This document shows positions 157 through 5,670 of a DNA stretch of 64,000 nt, in pieces (the stretch's first letter is position 1; every line of letters starts with the position of its first letter). Position numbers and translations under genes: made by a program. A model generated the notes under the pieces. The model did not search any database and was not told the DNA's origin. It saw only the letters and a program-made list of their open reading frames with translations. Source of the DNA: Stylophora pistillata (taxonomy: Eukaryota); NCBI RefSeq assembly GCF_002571385.2, contig NW_019217810.1:35052-99051 (forward strand), read 5' to 3'.

Positions 157-328
157 ACCCAGAAAGACCCGCCGAGCAATCCGCAAGAAGAATCCGCTCA
201 AGAATTTGAACGTGCTGATGAAGCTGAACCCTCACGCTAAGAGTGTCAAACGGGCTGAAATGCTGACTGTAGAGCGGAGAAGGGCTGCTAAAGAGGCAGT
301 ACTGAGCAAGAAGAGAGAAGGAAAATGA
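157..328 (+). CDS. RPL4: 60S ribosomal protein L4 (uL4), last coding exon; absent from the ORF track
   Basis: Acceptor ttttgtag ends at 156. The frame from 158 reads PRKTRRAIRKKNPLKNLNVLMKLNPHAKSVKRAEMLTVERRRAAKEAVLSKKREGK*, matching the eukaryotic L4 C-terminal KKNPLKNL..MLKLNPYAK motif. AATAAA at 363-368. Confidence 0.93.
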
Positions 329-628
329 AATGCTCAACTGTTAACGCTGTAATGAAAGGACGAATAAAACAGCAGTGAATTCAGTGTAAAAATCGTTTGT
401 TGGTTTTAGGCTCATTTTATGACCCCAGCAGGTTTATTGACATGATAGATTTCCAGTATGCTCGTGCTGTCTATCAGGAGTTAAAAATGATAGCTTAACC
501 GCGGGATTCATCTAGCCCCTCCAGCTCGATAAAGAAAATAATCTATTTATAGTTATTAATGTTATGCTAACATACTGATATAACAGTTCACTATAATCAC
601 AAAGTACAGATTCCCTCGTAAGGATTGT

Positions 629-865
629 TTAGACTAGCCCATTCCAGTCTGTAGCCGTGAAAAAGTGCACTCCTAGGTCTTCAACGCTCGCTCCATGTGC
701 TTTTAGAGAATTCCTCCTCCTGCTTGCAGAAGAAAAATATTCAACAGCATACTCCAGCCAGTCCTCTGGCTTGTCTCGTAGAATTACCAGGACGAATCCT
801 TCAAGCAGCTCCACAAGTCCTGGAGGAATTGCACTTTTTCTCGAGTGGGATGCCATGTTATCCAT
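629..865 (-). CDS. Small PKA RIIa dimerization/docking (D/D) domain protein, copy 1 (78 aa)
   Basis: IPPGLVELLEGFVLVILRDKPEDWLEYAVEYF matches the RIIa D/D consensus IPPGLTELLQG(Y/F)[20 protein letters not shown]. Minus-strand AATAAA at 433-438. Paralog at 2792-3055. Confidence 0.82.
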   Translation of the reverse strand: MDNMASHSRKSAIPPGLVELLEGFVLVILRDKPEDWLEYAVEYFSSASRRRNSLKAHGASVEDLGVHFFTATDWNGLV

Positions 866-2791
866 AATGTAGTGGGCAGTTCTTCCGTCAATACAGTTGG
901 GAATTATGACGTTATCTGATTCGCGCGTGCAGCGTCGTCCTCAGAGAAAGCGCGGGGAGAGTGAACTTTGGGAACCCTCTGACCATCGCCGAAGCTCGTG
1001 GGCTCTATTTTTCTGGAACAGTACCGCTGGCCAAAAAAAACTGCAGCTTTGGAGACCAGGCGGAACCCTGTGCTAGATTAGCTGCGGAGAGCACAACGGT
1101 CAAAGGTCGTACATACCCAAGGAGATCAATTAATGGCAAGTTGCAGGACAATTTTAAAGGAAAACAACATCTATCGCACAAAACATTCGAAAGAACTGAA
1201 ACGCGCATATAAATCTGAAAATATAAGTAGAGGAAAGGAAAACTCGAGACTTTTCGACCATAGAGCTTGTTTAGTTACGGCTACCCTCTTCAGCTTTATC
1301 AAAAAGTTGATACAGATTTGAAACATGTGACTTATCAACAAGTGTAACTGTCTGTTTCTTCTTTTTCGCCATTAAGCCACCCCAAAGCTCGCTCATGTGT
1401 TTGATCGCTTAGTTACTTCGAAAAGGATGGCACGCTCAGGTCGATATTTATATTTAGTAGCTACACATTTTCGGTAATTCCACTGATCAAAATCGTTTTA
1501 TGATGTAGGGAGTGGTCTCGAAAAATATTTATAGACCTAGTGACTAAATTTATACAGTAAGGAAAAAGCGAAAAATAATTCAAAAATGCTAGATAACATC
1601 TGATCTGCGTTTGCCATGCGGTTGCCGTGCGGTTGCGGTGCGTTTGTCATACTGGGCGACCAGTGGTATCATAGTACTGAACTATGGTGGTATCCGACAT
1701 TAAAACTCAAACCCTTTTCTATGTCGTGTTACGAACGAGAGAGTTAATCGGTTAAGTCGACTGAAATAAAGTTAGGGGAAGTTAAAAGTACGTAAGGAAA
1801 CTCAACGAAATCAAAGGATTCATAGGCAAAAAAACAAAAACAAACAGAAAAAACTGTGAGGTGTAGAACGACAAAAAAGCTAAAACAAAAGCACGGTTGT
1901 GTGCGCACGCGTACAGGAAATTCATGGAAAATTCCGTGGTCAATGAAGTTATTTCCGGGCTTGTTTTTGTGTTTGTTTGTATTCAGGCGGAAGCGCTTGC
2001 TACCAGCGGGGATTCTATCGTGAGAGAGGGCGTGAAACACGCTATCAGCGAAAACCTAGAATTTATTCTTTATATTAGATGACCGGGGACATTCGAGTGA
2101 ATAGGTGACATTCGTTAACCTTGTATTCGGCGTAATTTGCCTTAGTAGTGTATTACAAAATTTGTCAGTGAACAAGCGGTCTCTTAGTAGGTGGCTAGCT
2201 GCTTTGGGCTGAGCTAATGGCTATAGAGAAAACTAACACCCAGACGGGCGTTCAGACAGTCCATTAGTCATTGACCGAATCTCGACCTGGTAGTGTCTTA
2301 GTTTACGTGCACTGAAATAATTCCTTTAAAATCCTAGCATGACTGTTGTCGCTTAAGATTTTATCGGATAATAAGTTATGTTTTAAGATTATAATCTCTT
2401 TCCTGAGTCAATTAAAGTGATTAAATGCCACGAGAGAGATAACTGTGGTTATTTTTTATCGTATATGGTTAACCAAACCGGGGAATAACAGGAGCTGCAT
2501 ATTTTTACGAGGAGTCCGTTCAATTCAAGAATATTGGTGGTTGCCCTGGACATATATTTTTAGATCTTTTAGCCAATTGTTCAGATATCCACCGTGACCG
2601 TGTTAAGAAGTTCGCGTGAGGGCTTCGCAGCTTTCCGTGATAAATACTCGGGGTGACATTTCGATCACCTTATTTAAACCTGTTGGATTTCATTGAAAGC
2701 GGCCATAAAATATTTTCGCAGCAAGTGGCTGGGAGCAAGGCGAACGGACATTTTATGAAAAGTTCGATTGCTTGCGACGGAAATTTGGAGA

Positions 2792-3055
2792 ATGCATCAG
2801 AAGATTACAGCAAAACATGGAAAGTTTTCGTCCCATTTGGTGAACCCGGTTTGTATTACAGAGGATCTTATTTGTCTTCTAGAAGGTTTCACCATAACAG
2901 CTATGAATGAAAAACCCCGAAATGAAGACTTAGTGGAATTTGCAGCCAGTTATTTCGAAGAAATACGAAACAAGAGAAACTTGCTGGCGGAGAGAGGGAT
3001 TGGTAACTTCAGAACTGGTTTATACCTCAGTAAAGAATGGAATGGACAAGTATGA
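2792..3055 (+). CDS. Small PKA RIIa D/D domain protein, copy 2 (87 aa from the first ATG)
   Basis: ITEDLICLLEGFTITAMNEKPRNEDLVEFAASYF fits the RIIa D/D pattern. It aligns with copy 1 through to the shared C-terminus WNG[LQ]V*. Confidence 0.78.
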   Translation: MHQKITAKHGKFSSHLVNPVCITEDLICLLEGFTITAMNEKPRNEDLVEFAASYFEEIRNKRNLLAERGIGNFRTGLYLSKEWNGQV

Positions 3056-5244
3056 CACTGCCATATCATTTTGGACTACAAAAGTTGTTGAACTAATATT
3101 TCGTAATTTGGAGACTTAAAACTGACTTGGCACACTGATGAAGGACGAAATTTGACGGGATTACTGTCAGCGGAGGAACGGAAGTGCCATCGAAGACAAT
3201 TTAAAGCGTTGTTTGGCTGCATTTTGAGTAGATGTAGGGAATCTATACCGTATTTTAAAGACAAGTTAAGCCAAAAAGTTTGAGGGGAGTACATGTACAA
3301 GTGCTATTACGAATTATGTAAATTAACGGAATATTTCACACTGGGCTGAAGAATCATGCGGACAAACAACAACCAGTCTCTAGTTTTAGAGGCATCATTA
3401 TATCGTATGTATTGCCAGTTCACCGTGCTTCCAGTTGAAGAAGAACACTATGATTGGACTCAATGTTTGAATCCATCAAGTGAAACGTGGAATCACGTAA
3501 TCAACTTGAAGCATGTTCAAGGTTTAAAAATGTTCTTCGGTTTTCAGCGTAGGCGAAGAAGTTGTTAAGTATCAAATTTCAGGGTTTATAGAAGAATTCG
3601 TCCGAACTAGCTAACTTTATCTTGTGGAAGTGAGTTATAATAACTTAATTCAACCGTGACTCCATTCATTAAAATGCTCCGCATATGTTCCCATTAGGTA
3701 TATTGTGTGTGGGATTCTAAGTTCAAAATCGTGGTCACGAAATAAATACAGATTGATGACTAACATATCCAGTATCGAGGTTTACGCAAAAGTTTGCCAA
3801 GGCCTTAAATAACATTTTAATCTTGTTAATTTGTTGACAGGAATCCAGAAGACTTTATTTTAGGCGGAGCAAGATGCGTCTTAGGCGATGTAGATGTTTT
3901 TGTTCGGGGGATAACAGTCTCAATTACAAAAGGAAAGGAAATGGCACATTACTAAGATATTCGTGATCACCAACGACATGCAATCAACAAAACAATAGGA
4001 CGCAATTTTTTCGAGAAGGCAACTTATCTATAGAAACTCACATCCTTTTATTTATACTCCGTGAGTGCGTAGGAGTGTTAAGAAATTTCGGGAAAACATC
4101 CGGAAAAACGTAACAGTACTTGAGCTTGTTCTTACTCTTAGAAGCCATGAAACACGTCCGCAACAGACAAGCCTTCAAACCACAACCCTCTTTCTGGAAA
4201 AATAACTACATTTTGGGGTTTTTTGCCGACTCATTACGGCAAAAGACCTTTTTAAAATCTCTTACAAAGCTCTCCACTGCAAGAGGCTTAAAATTTTCGG
4301 ACCTGTTACTTTTAGTTATTTGGCGGGGTGTGAATTCAAAACCGTTTCTTTTTTTTTTATCCTCATTTCAGAATTTTTCTTCATTCGTTTTTGAATTATA
4401 GGTTTACTGTGTTAATCTCAGTCAAAAGAAACCGTCAAAATTTCGTGCAAATAACAACAATGACTGATGTTCTAGCGCCACGCTTTCTCTGTCCTTCTTT
4501 TGTTCCTGAGATCTACGACTGAACACAGGTCAGTTGGAAGTTATTATTTGGTTAAATGGATCAAATTATTATGTAATGTAAGCCACTTATGGCGGACCGT
4601 CTGTAAAGCTATGAAGCGCCAAACATGCACGGAAGGAAGATGTCAAGATAAGAGTAAAGTAGTCTACAGATATACTCTACATGCATGGCCTTGGCTGCCG
4701 TCTCGTGACAATTTTCATCTTAAAGCCATACCAAAGAAATTCAATAAAATAGTGACACAATATGAAACGCCTACGCTGTTCCACCTTCGGAAGGGGCAGG
4801 ATGTAAATTACTGCCCGGGGGAGCCGGCGCTTTTACTAACGATTTCTTAAAAAAAAAAAAAAAAGAAAAAAGAGTTTCCCTATACGCCCAGTGTAAAGAT
4901 ATAAAATTTCTCCATAACTTGTTTCAGGTTTTTCTTTCCAGTAAGGTTTATAAATATTTGTGATTCCCGACTTGACTCAAAGCCAAAAACCTGTCAACTT
5001 ATTTTTTAATCCGTTGTTAATCTGCGTGTTTTTTGCTGATAGGAGTAAGCTCTACATCGATAGAAGTCTCTTGAAAAGGCACATGAATTGATAATAATTG
5101 AGCTAATTAGACTGGAGGACAATCATTACCTTGTAAAAAGTAATGATCAATGAACTGAACAAAATAAAAGACTACCCGCCCACCCACAATTTTTTTCGGC
5201 GTGTGTCCTCCGGAAGTTAAGGTCCAGTCGTCTTCATTTATCAC

Positions 5245-5670
5245 CTCATGTACCCGAGACAACCCTCCCCCCCCCCACGAGACAACTTTACAGAGCGTTT
5301 GTATGAAATTTGACATCTGCTAACCTCGTTCGGCTAGGCCAGGTTGCATATTCGACAAAGTGGTAGACGTAGGCGACAGGAAAAAAAAGCTGTAAAACGC
5401 ACGTGCACTGGTTATAGTGTGCGCACGCATTTCCTGTTCGGGTTTCGTCGTCTCGGATGGGCGAGACAAGGTGTTTACATGAGAAAAAGTTGTCCTGCCT
5501 GCCAAGGTTACCCAACCTGCCGAGGTGAGACAACTTCCACGCCCCCCCAGGTTTTCTTGCCTACCTGAGACCAGTTACAACCTCATTTAAACGGTCGGCT
5601 GGATTTTGTAAAGAAATGAGTGAGAAGTTAGCTCGCCCAGGGTAACTCGGAGGGAGGATTGTCTCGGTAA
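5245..5670. mobile_element. Degenerate non-autonomous DNA element with inverted repeats
   Basis: ccgagacaaccctcccc (~5254) and gggaggattgtctcgg (~5652) are inverted repeats; internal repeated gagacaa motifs. Confidence 0.5.

What the first reader, a model, noticed from the sequence alone, without database searches (positions are those of the whole stretch)
629..3055. Divergent pair of RIIa-D/D-only microproteins with a PKA-site-like motif and a conserved WNGxV C-terminus
Seen: two 78-87 aa ORFs in head-to-head orientation, each with an RIIa docking domain followed by an aligned basic segment (SRRRNSL versus RNKRNLL) and a shared tail G..[FL]...WNG[LQ]V*, with little DNA similarity. Known: PKA RII is a D/D domain plus an RRxS inhibitor site plus cAMP-binding domains, and D/D domains bind AKAP helices; flagellar R2D2 proteins such as SPA17 and ROPN1 also use this domain. 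Inference: these could be cAMP-insensitive mini-R subunits or AKAP-blocking decoys, one phosphorylatable (RRNS) and one not (KRNL), possibly forming a heterodimer from a shared promoter. I do not recognise the WNGxV tail.
Basis: partly seen in the sequence, partly recalled or inferred. Interest (0 to 1): 0.8.

Follow-up and report, generated by a model that had tools for sequence, protein, structure and literature searches.

The report
Coral pair of tiny RIIa-docking proteins
Two small, intronless, head-to-head coral genes encode 78- and 87-residue proteins that are little more than the dimerisation/docking domain of protein kinase A's RII subunit plus a conserved, undescribed tail; they belong to a family I found only in corals and their relatives (Anthozoa), and its function is still untested.

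Summary
ORF A (629-865, minus, 78 aa) and ORF B (2792-3055, plus, 87 aa) both match Pfam RIIa. They are 33% identical (E 7e-13) and share the WNGxV end.

Both are real genes, not exons or debris:
- Many orthologues, all stopping right after the same tail.
- dN/dS of 0.06-0.30.
- The order B, A, then RPL4 is conserved in other corals.
- B is an unspliced polyadenylated mRNA of about 1.3 kb in four RNA studies.

A gave no sense-strand reads. Only RPL4 read-through, antisense to A, covers it, so co-expression from a shared promoter is not supported.

A profile search of 1.8 billion proteins found the domain-plus-tail module in only about 18 proteins. These are scleractinian A and B types, a few distant small forms, and octocoral proteins of 80-901 aa in which the module ends an acidic protein (one is Xenia's 'titin homolog').

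The R-[KR]-x-S-L site is invariant in A orthologues, but the serine occurs only there. B has L/M/Q at that position and octocorals mostly A (KRRNAL).

Best reading: a new R2D2 subfamily of dimeric docking adaptors with a conserved C-terminal flank, and with A regulated by a basophilic kinase. The mini-R or decoy ideas remain untested.

The parts
629..865 (-). Gene A coding sequence (78 aa; the Met conserved in orthologues is codon 4). It holds an RII-type D/D domain (residues ~13-47), the RRRNSL motif (49-54) and the tail ...FFTATDWNGLV followed by the stop.
433..438 (-). Only AATAAA signal on the minus strand between A's stop and the RPL4 3' end. It is the likely polyadenylation signal of gene A (inferred, not seen in reads).
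   Evidence: TTTATT at 433 on the plus strand; RPL4 poly(A) at ~392 leaves no room for further A exons without overlapping RPL4
2792..3055 (+). Gene B coding sequence (87 aa). It has the conserved MHQK start, a D/D domain with a 2-residue loop insertion, the non-phosphorylatable motif NKRNLL, and the tail ...LYLSKEWNGQV followed by the stop.
2474..3835 (+). Unspliced polyadenylated mRNA of gene B (outermost contig ends). Plus-sense stranded reads cover ~2600-3800 with no joints.
   Evidence: contigs X7 2474-3462 and 3464-3835, X4 2526-3559 and 3601-3759, X3 2286-3361; X24 depth 6-40 with the first mate on the minus strand, the same orientation as the plus-strand RPL4 control
3741..3746 (+). 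AATAAA polyadenylation signal of gene B, close to where read depth falls.
2755..2910 (+). Out-of-frame upstream ATG (weak context, T at -3) that opens a 51-codon ORF overlapping B's start. B's own ATG has A at -3. The ORF is not conserved and may dampen translation (inference).
2251..2523 (.). The only conserved non-coding block between the two genes (~71% identity to two other coral loci). It lies 270-540 bp upstream of B's ATG, just ahead of where B's RNA begins, and is the likely promoter or regulatory region of B.

Best explanation
A and B are two intronless, protein-coding paralogues of a subfamily of R2D2 proteins (non-kinase proteins carrying the RII-type docking/dimerisation domain) that I found only in Anthozoa. 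Each protein is essentially one 'extended D/D domain'. It has an RII-like N-terminal strand and two helices that should pair into an X-type four-helix bundle dimer and present a groove for an amphipathic (AKAP-type) helix. Helix II then continues through a basic segment ([KR][KR]x-x-L). A conserved C-terminal flank follows, ending aromatic-x-x-x-W-x-G-x-[V/I/L]-COOH. I infer that the dimer docks on an AKAP-like helix of a scaffold. I also infer that the conserved flank either recruits a second partner through its free hydrophobic C-terminus or folds back to tune the docking groove, as reported for the flanks of SPA17. In the scleractinian A lineage the basic segment has become an optimal basophilic-kinase (PKA-type) site, R-[KR]-x-S-L, which would make A's behaviour switchable by phosphorylation; B is a constitutive, non-phosphorylatable version. 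B is expressed in adult colonies. A was not detected there and is probably restricted to a stage or cell type, such as gametes or larvae.

Shown: gene reality, fold, conservation, synteny, and B's unspliced mRNA. Inferred: dimerisation, docking on amphipathic helices, the role of the tail, phosphorylation, and where A is expressed.
For: Domain and fold:
- Pfam RIIa hits.
- Solved RIIalpha D/D chains match at E 1.6e-9 for A alone and 5e-11 with the family profile.
- The AlphaFold model (pLDDT 80) has helices 17-31 and 36-56 and superposes on RIIalpha D/D at 1.1 A over 39 residues, 49-51% identity.
- R2D2 hallmarks as defined in PMC8339350 are present in A: the IPPGL strand, Gly before helix I, a Pxx[L/V] loop (in orthologues) and the YF motif.

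Real genes:
- 12 A orthologues (67-97% identity) and 22 B orthologues (69-92%), with the start and the stop after the tail conserved.
- dN/dS is 0.10-0.30 for A and 0.06-0.14 for B, with dS 0.3-1.7.
- The Val codon varies (GTC/GTT/GTA/GTG) and the stop varies (TAA/TGA), yet the stop stays in place.
- DNA conservation is confined to the two coding sequences, the RPL4 exon and one upstream block.
- The order B, then A 1.2-1.5 kb away and divergent, then RPL4 convergent is kept in four other coral contigs.
- B orthologues have been called independently as 87-aa proteins in Pocillopora damicornis (RMX49146.1) and Acropora cervicornis (KAK2565389.1).

Transcript:
- B is covered by plus-sense stranded reads and by poly(A) RNA contigs from four studies, without any joint.

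The tail is part of the family:
- G76 is one of five invariant columns and W74 is nearly invariant across scleractinian A, B, distant small forms and octocoral long forms.
- Three clades are well supported (100/99 and 99/98).

Kinase site:
- In A orthologues R(-3), S(0) and L(+1) are (nearly) invariant, position -2 is K or R, and position -1 varies. This is the pattern a basophilic kinase reads.

Precedent:
- Conserved flanks of SPA17 occlude the AKAP groove, and R2D2 paralogues act as docking dimers in cilia (PMC8339350).
Against: - No binding, dimerisation or phosphorylation was tested.
- The tail is modelled with low confidence in monomer predictions (pLDDT 63 in A, 46-53 in B), and nothing in the PDB aligns with it, so its role is a guess.
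- AlphaFold places A's RRRNSL inside an extended helix II, whereas kinases bind extended peptides.
- RIIalpha's Ile3 equivalent is not conserved, and B lacks the PPG motif (TEDL instead), so docking specificity may differ from RII.
- A gave no sense-strand reads in the one stranded run and no coverage in two poly(A) RNA runs, so its expression is unproven.
- No RFX X-box was found between the genes, so there is no positive hint of a ciliary programme.
Confidence: 0.55

Rival explanations
1. Mini regulatory subunits. The basic segment sits in the active-site cleft of the PKA catalytic subunit, as a substrate (A, RRxSL) or as a pseudosubstrate (B and the octocoral forms). The dimer would then be a cAMP-insensitive, AKAP-anchored buffer or inhibitor of the catalytic subunit.
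For: A's motif R-[KR]-N-S-L and the octocoral K-R-R-N-A-L resemble the classical recognition sequences: RRxS in RII, RRGAI in RI and RRNAI in PKI (the last three from my own knowledge). The basic residues and the hydrophobic +1 residue are conserved across the whole family while the P0 residue changes (S, A, L, M, Q, V, E, N). The D/D part is closer to RII itself than to any other R2D2 protein.
Against: No cyclic-nucleotide-binding domain follows. The proteins end at 78/87 residues and B's mRNA is unspliced. In true R subunits those domains supply most of the affinity for the catalytic subunit (general knowledge). The motif starts only ~4 residues after the D/D core and is predicted to be helical. 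Bulky or charged P0 residues (L, M, Q, E, V) are not typical pseudosubstrates. RII itself has a basic stretch after YF, so a basic helix-II end may be a generic D/D feature. The genome already holds complete R subunits.
Confidence: 0.12
2. AKAP-blocking decoys. The dimers have no cargo and act only by competing with PKA RII (or with other R2D2 proteins) for anchoring helices, displacing them.
For: Very small size and an RII-like groove sequence in A (IPPGLVELLEGFVLVVLR against RIIalpha IPPGLTELLQGYTVEVLR). B is expressed at a modest level in adult tissue.
Against: A pure competitor would not need a C-terminal flank as conserved as the D/D core (G76 invariant, W74 nearly so). In octocorals the same module is tethered to long acidic proteins, i.e. 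it carries cargo.
Confidence: 0.13
3. Obligate A/B heterodimer made from one bidirectional promoter, by analogy with SPA17-ROPN1L and RSP7-RSP11.
For: The head-to-head arrangement is conserved in several corals. There is one conserved non-coding block between the genes. A orthologues are mostly acidic (pI 4.7-5.5) and B orthologues mostly basic (pI 7.8-9.3), a complementarity that PMC8339350 proposes for SPA17-ROPN1L.
Against: B is transcribed where A is not. In the stranded run, minus-sense depth over A is 0-0.9, no more than the library's 5-6% strand leakage, and two poly(A) runs have zero coverage from 401 to 2400. The conserved block lies next to B, 1.4 kb from A's ATG. pI complementarity is weak in this genome (5.5 against 6.8) and is broken by P0003 and P0011.
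Confidence: 0.1
4. The ORFs are first exons of longer spliced genes, or decaying copies of exon 1 of a PKA RII gene.
For: Both end at a GT (Val codon), and A's D/D is about 50% identical to RIIalpha.
Against: No joint in B's RNA at 11-40x stranded depth. The base at donor position +3 is C, T, A or G in different species while the stop is retained. RPL4's last exon lies 237 bp beyond A's stop on the other strand. dN/dS is 0.06-0.30. The proteins are conserved in length across three anthozoan clades.
Confidence: 0.03

Closest known systems
Docking/dimerisation (D/D) domain of PKA regulatory subunit RIIalpha/RIIbeta
   Same: This is the best sequence and structure match: E 1.6e-9 to 5e-11, 49-51% identity, 1.1 A over 39 residues. 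The IPPGL strand, the YF motif and a basic stretch after helix II are shared.
   Different: No linker and no cAMP-binding domains; the protein ends about 30 residues after the D/D with a tail absent from R subunits. Complete R subunits exist elsewhere in this genome.
SPA17 (R2D2 protein with an 'extended' D/D of ~75 residues; PDB 7my4)
   Same: RII-type D/D with conserved flanking sequence. The flanks are reported to occlude the AKAP groove and to favour heterodimers with a paralogue (PMC8339350). The size of the structured unit is about the same as the whole A or B protein.
   Different: Weaker match than RII (E 3.5e-4; Z 4.2, 4.7 A). The SPA17 chains in the PDB list run to 147-151 residues, against 78 and 87 here. 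The flanks are not alignable. From my own knowledge, SPA17 also has a C-terminal IQ motif, which is absent here.
ROPN1L / RSP11 and RSP7 (radial-spoke R2D2 proteins)
   Same: Non-kinase RIIa proteins that dock as dimers on the amphipathic helices of a structural AKAP (RSP3) in cilia.
   Different: Weak matches (E 4e-3 to 0.2). They are larger and carry other C-terminal domains. No evidence places A or B in cilia, and no X-box was found.
RIIAD1 and the 75-aa 'RIIa domain-containing protein' of PDB 9d5n
   Same: They show that proteins consisting of little more than an RIIa domain exist.
   Different: RIIAD1 is described with an N-terminal helix instead of the beta-strand (PMC8339350). The 9d5n chain matches only at E 0.03-0.8, with its domain at the C-terminus. 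Neither is known to carry the WxGx[VIL] tail; I could not compare RIIAD1 directly.
PKI and R-subunit inhibitor sites (RRNAI, RRGAI, RRxS)
   Same: The basic segment of A (RR[RK]NSL) and of the octocoral forms (KRRNAL) reads like these sites. The comparison sequences come from my own knowledge.
   Different: A resemblance of five residues only. P0 is L, M, Q, V, E or N in other family members, and the segment is predicted to be helical. The proteins also lack PKI's flanking affinity helix (my own knowledge).

Membership tests
Pfam RIIa (PF02197) domain | Score at or above the curated gathering cut-off (22.4 bits) | tested here: met
   A scores 25.7 bits. B scores 20.3 bits (below the cut-off, E 4e-4), but B-clade relatives pass (P0212 37.8, P0071 23.5) and B aligns to A at E 7e-13.
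R2D2 clade of the PKA-R D/D superfamily (as defined in PMC8339350) | Loop between helices I and II reads Pxx[L/I/V], not PxxP | tested here: met
   A orthologues have PEDL or PENV (the window's own A has PEDW). B-type P0212 has PADL; scleractinian B has a 2-residue insertion (PRNEDL).
R2D2 clade of the PKA-R D/D superfamily (as defined in PMC8339350) | N-terminal beta-strand (RII Ile3/Ile5 region), Gly at the start of helix I, YF motif in helix II | tested here: inconclusive
   A has I-P-P-G-L identical to RIIalpha, plus G16 and Y43-F44. The Ile5 equivalent is conserved, the Ile3 equivalent is not. B has I-T-E-D-L (no Gly) and YF. The monomer AlphaFold models show no strand, which would form only in the dimer.
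PKA regulatory subunit (RI/RII) | Two cyclic-nucleotide-binding domains after the inhibitor site | tested here: not met
   The proteins end at 78 and 87 residues. The stop is conserved and B's mRNA is unspliced. A true R subunit in this genome shows RIIa plus cNMP_binding.
PKA regulatory subunit (RI/RII) | Inhibitor sequence R-R-x-[S/A/G]-hydrophobic | tested here: met
   By sequence only. A has R-[KR]-x-S-L, invariant in its orthologues. The octocoral forms have K-R-R-N-A-L. B has K-[KR]-[ND]-[LMQ]-L, which is not a standard P0 residue.
SPA17 | Closest D/D match is SPA17, and the protein runs to ~150 residues with a calmodulin-binding IQ region at the C-terminus | tested here: not met
   SPA17 matches at E 3.5e-4, against 1.6e-9 for RII. 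The proteins end after the WNGxV tail, and no Pfam family other than RIIa is hit. That SPA17 has an IQ region is from my own knowledge.
RIIAD1 | Orthology to RIIAD1 (N-terminal helix preceding the D/D) | not tested
   No tool supplied an RIIAD1 sequence and I did not type one from memory. Indirectly, A has the RII-type strand motif rather than a helix, and every full-length relative whose source could be traced is from a coral or an octocoral.
AKAP-binding D/D dimer (functional class) | Forms a dimer and binds an amphipathic helix | not testable with these tools
   Only monomer prediction is available. This needs multimer modelling or biochemistry.

The most novel reading that the evidence does not exclude
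The family is an anthozoan invention that separates anchoring and catalytic-subunit capture from cAMP sensing. AKAP-docked D/D dimers would present a substrate-type site (scleractinian A, RRxSL), an Ala-type pseudosubstrate (octocoral KRRNAL) or a blocked site (B) to the PKA catalytic subunit. This would parallel the RII/RI split in miniature, with the WxGx[VIL] tail as a new C-terminal recognition motif.
Probability: 0.1. Interest if true: 0.75.

Novelty: new variant of a known kind. Interest (0 to 1): 0.42.

Why it matters
D/D domains are the universal plug of cAMP signalling scaffolds and of ciliary radial spokes. A published census of the superfamily lists 18 families (PMC8339350), and I could not place this one in any of those I was able to compare. 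This family shows a D/D domain closer to RII than to any other R2D2 protein, fused to a conserved basic segment and an unknown C-terminal motif. It occurs as stand-alone microproteins in stony corals and as the C-terminal anchor of long acidic proteins in octocorals. The A gene appeared in none of the protein clusters with an NCBI or UniRef source that I examined. B occurs only as a 'hypothetical protein'. The pair is therefore also an example of conserved microproteins that annotation pipelines miss. If the tail proves to be a new peptide-recognition motif, or the basic segment proves to bind the catalytic subunit, the family would give a simple natural tool for studying anchored PKA signalling in cnidarians. 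As it stands, it is a well-supported new subfamily without a tested function.

Tried and rejected
Synteny was taken instead from 11 metagenome contigs.
- The protein-atlas search could not take the window protein or P0125.
- Fold searches with Foldseek (PDB) and VIA-align wide returned only D/D domains; nothing covers residues 60-78.
- A profile search of PDB sequences aligned nothing past profile position 66 of 85.
- A search for an RFX X-box (GTNRCC N0-3 RGYAAC, one mismatch allowed) between the genes, here and in two orthologous loci, found nothing in the window. This gives no support for a ciliary promoter.
- A search for a third paralogue or an octocoral-type long form in this genome found only A and B. 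A weak hit on C85 is a low-complexity DWTGLV repeat with stops.
- The literature search 'RIIa' plus 'coral' returned only irrelevant Fc-receptor papers. The scan's own notes hold nothing on RIIa.
- The 'splice at the Val GT' reading and the 'pseudogenised RII exon' reading were rejected.
- Two B relatives that seem to read through the stop (P0049, P0066) continue with W exactly at the TGA. I take this as gene calling under a TGA=Trp code, not as loss of the stop.
- No contig was taken for human, and no spliced model had to be searched.
Full report
1. THE OBSERVATION

The window is G000:C27:35052-99051 of a 398-Mb assembly in 5,513 contigs. The sequencing runs that hold it are labelled coral.

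ORF A lies at 629-865 on the minus strand (78 aa). ORF B runs to 3055 on the plus strand and is 87 aa when started at the ATG at 2792. The two are head to head, with their ATGs 1.9 kb apart.

Evidence that both carry an RIIa domain:
- Both hit Pfam RIIa. A scores 25.7 bits, above the 22.4 cut-off. B scores 20.3 bits, just under it.
- They align to each other at 33% identity, E 7e-13, from the D/D domain through the basic segment to the common WNG[LQ]V end.
- Nucleotide identity is only 48% on the codon alignment.
- A's domain matches solved RIIalpha D/D chains at E 1.6e-9, ahead of SPA17 (3.5e-4) and ropporin-1-like (4e-3).
- An AlphaFold model of A (pLDDT 80; helices 17-31, 36-56 and 67-70) superposes on RIIalpha D/D at 1.1 A over 39 residues, with 49-51% identity.

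2. ARE THEY GENES, AND ARE THEY COMPLETE?

Four lines of evidence say yes.

(a) Orthologues. The word search found 12 relatives of A (67-97% identity, 74-87 aa). All end in WNG[LM]V followed by a stop. It found 22 relatives of B (69-92%). The MHQK start is nearly invariant, and the WNGQ[VL] end is followed by a stop in 19 of them. Two apparent read-throughs continue with W exactly where the window has TGA, as expected from gene calling under a TGA=Trp code.

(b) Selection. I took coding DNA from eleven metagenome contigs. Pairwise Nei-Gojobori dN/dS is 0.10-0.30 for A and 0.06-0.14 for B, at dS 0.3-1.7. The terminal Val codon is GTC, GTT, GTA or GTG, and the stop is TAA or TGA, in different species. 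That is the pattern of a coding end. A splice donor would prefer A or G at position +3 (my own knowledge).

(c) Context. blastn against those contigs finds conservation only in four places: the two coding sequences, the last exon of RPL4, and one non-coding block at 2251-2523. The order B (divergent, 1.2-1.5 kb away), then A, then RPL4 (convergent) is kept in L012, L014, L017 and L018. The RPL4 exon (window 157-392) is confirmed by Pfam Ribos_L4_asso_C at E 5e-11 and by very deep read coverage. Its poly(A) site is near 392. Only 237 bp therefore separate A's stop from the RPL4 3' end, and they hold one minus-strand AATAAA at 433-438. That leaves no room for further A exons unless they overlap RPL4.

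(d) RNA. In the stranded raw-read run X24, RPL4 serves as the orientation control for plus-strand genes (first mate on minus). Gene B shows the same orientation at depth 6-40 from about 2600 to 3800. No joint is reported between 400 and 5200 in any of the four runs. Poly(A) RNA contigs from three other studies span 2474-3835 collinearly with the genome. An AATAAA lies at 3741. B is thus an unspliced mRNA of about 1.3 kb whose only conserved part is the 87-codon ORF.

Gene A is different. Positions 400-2400 are covered at about 1% of RPL4's depth, in the RPL4 orientation. This is RPL4 read-through, antisense to A, and it stops at the conserved block ahead of B. Minus-sense depth over A is 0-0.9, which is within the 5-6% strand leakage seen on RPL4 itself. 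Two poly(A) runs have no coverage there at all. A's expression is therefore not shown, and its reality rests on the evolutionary evidence.

3. HOW WIDE IS THE FAMILY?

I searched a profile of A and B types against 1.84 billion representative proteins. It returned 367 hits at E<1e-3. Nearly all of the 150 listed match the D/D part only, for example RII first exons and large D/D-containing proteins.

About 18 proteins match through the tail:
- The scleractinian A and B types.
- Distant small forms: P0212 (B-like, ends NWDGLI), P0071 (ends DFTGHI) and P0077 (A-like, ends NWSGAI).
- A third group of 80-901 aa in which the module is the C-terminus of an acidic protein, e.g. ...KRRNALRKYSIEVSDQALFSDMDWCGNI.

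One member of the third group is XP_046858827.1, annotated 'titin homolog' in the octocoral Xenia. A second profile search added more of these long forms, and none from outside this set.

A tree separates the octocoral-type clade (support 100/99) and the B clade including P0212 and P0071 (99/98) from the A types. The A/B duplication is therefore older than the scleractinian radiation sampled here.

Across all three groups the invariant columns are E22, P33, A40, F44 and G76. L20, G23, F24, Y43, L54 and W74 are nearly invariant. The tail is as constrained as the D/D core.

This genome holds no third member. It does hold ordinary RIIa proteins: an intronless complete R subunit, another RII-like first exon, and ropporin-like and SPA17-like exons.

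On annotation: none of the A-type clusters I examined has an NCBI or UniRef member. B has two, both 87 aa. They are Pocillopora damicornis RMX49146.1 (UniProt auto-name 'RIIa domain-containing protein') and Acropora cervicornis KAK2565389.1 ('hypothetical protein'). The window's B sits in the same 90% cluster as the Pocillopora protein, so the genome is probably a pocilloporid coral (inference).

4. THE BASIC MOTIF

In A orthologues the pattern is R(-3), K/R(-2), variable (-1), S(0), L(+1). R, S and L are (nearly) invariant while the neighbouring positions change. These are exactly the positions a PKA-type basophilic kinase reads (general knowledge), so a conserved phosphosite is a fair inference.

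The serine, however, is confined to scleractinian A. The residue at that position elsewhere is:
- L, M or Q in scleractinian B.
- L in P0212.
- V in P0071.
- N in P0077.
- A, E or V in the octocoral forms. These often have a second R-K-x-S-I a few residues later.

What the family shares is the basic pair and the following Leu. Both monomer models predict this segment as part of a long helix II. RII itself has a basic stretch after the YF motif (alignment). So the 'inhibitor-site' reading is possible but not required.

5. MECHANISM

The best-supported account is that these proteins are 'extended D/D domains', like SPA17(1-75). They would form dimers that dock on an amphipathic helix of a scaffold, with conserved flanks adding a second function.

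PMC8339350 reports three relevant points:
- R2D2 proteins are defined by an N-terminal strand and a Pxx[L/I/V] loop.
- SPA17's flanks form a sheet that occludes the AKAP groove.
- Paralogue heterodimers (SPA17-ROPN1L, RSP7-RSP11) bind AKAP helices better.

A fits the R2D2 definition in its orthologues. B fits it in part.

Two observations argue against a pure competitor and for a docking module that carries something. The free hydrophobic C-terminus preceded by invariant W-x-G points to a recognition element or a fold-back flank. And in octocorals the module anchors long acidic proteins. In the A lineage the basic segment would add phospho-regulation. All of this beyond the fold is inference.

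The rival readings are scored separately in the report sections: mini-R subunit or PKA buffer, decoy, obligate A/B heterodimer, and exon or pseudogene. On the heterodimer idea, A types are mostly acidic and B types mostly basic, which gives weak support. The expression data show that B works without detectable A.

6. COMPARISON AND NOVELTY

The proteins are members of the RIIa/R2D2 superfamily. They are not PKA regulatory subunits, because they lack cNMP domains. They are not SPA17 or ropporin by best match or architecture. RIIAD1 could not be compared directly.

I found no description of the D/D-plus-WxGx[VIL] module in the papers searched. Nothing in the PDB covers the tail.

I class the family as a new variant of a known kind. 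It is a solid subfamily, apparently lineage-restricted and largely unannotated, with an intriguing PKA-like motif but no functional test. Interest is moderate.

7. LIMITS

- Read laying was limited to one call.
- The taxonomic range rests on protein collections without names for most entries.

Noticed in passing
window 157-392 (+), read-through to ~2400: This is the last exon of ribosomal protein L4 (Pfam Ribos_L4_asso_C, E 5e-11). The splice acceptor is at 156/157 (1,296 reads with a loose end there) and poly(A) is near 392. About 1% of transcripts read through for 2 kb, antisense across gene A, and stop at the conserved block ahead of gene B.
   Followed up: partly
G000:C147:458149-459291 (locus L005:1459-2601): An intronless, complete PKA regulatory subunit (372 aa open frame; RIIa plus two cNMP_binding domains). 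It combines an RII-type D/D (SIPPGL) with an Ala-type pseudosubstrate, RGRRRAVAAE. That is an RI-like inhibitor site on an RII-like protein, and the gene may be a retrogene.
   Followed up: partly
window ~1150-1300: An interspersed repeat lies between the two genes, with at least 26 other copies at 69-91% identity on other contigs. It helps explain why the A-B spacer is 1.9 kb here and 1.2-1.5 kb in other corals.
   Followed up: no
window 5517-5636: RNA contigs of two studies match only this 120-bp stretch and run on into unlike sequence on both sides (255-letter loose ends). It is probably an internal exon of a spliced gene downstream of B.
   Followed up: no
P0118 = XP_046858827.1 (Xenia sp.), residues 836-900: The RefSeq name 'titin homolog' seems to reflect only the acidic repeats. 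The C-terminal 65 residues are the D/D-plus-WNGNI module of this family, which Pfam RIIa barely detects (13 bits).
   Followed up: partly
window 833 (and probably 832): All RNA reads and one contig carry A>T at 833, which changes Ser11 of protein A to Arg. This matches the 97%-identical protein P0001 (RKRP instead of RKSA). It is an allelic difference in the unconserved N-terminus.
   Followed up: partly
window 1611-1645: A short run of direct GCGGTTGC(C/G)GT repeats lies in the spacer. It superficially resembles RFX half-sites but is not a palindromic X-box.
   Followed up: partly
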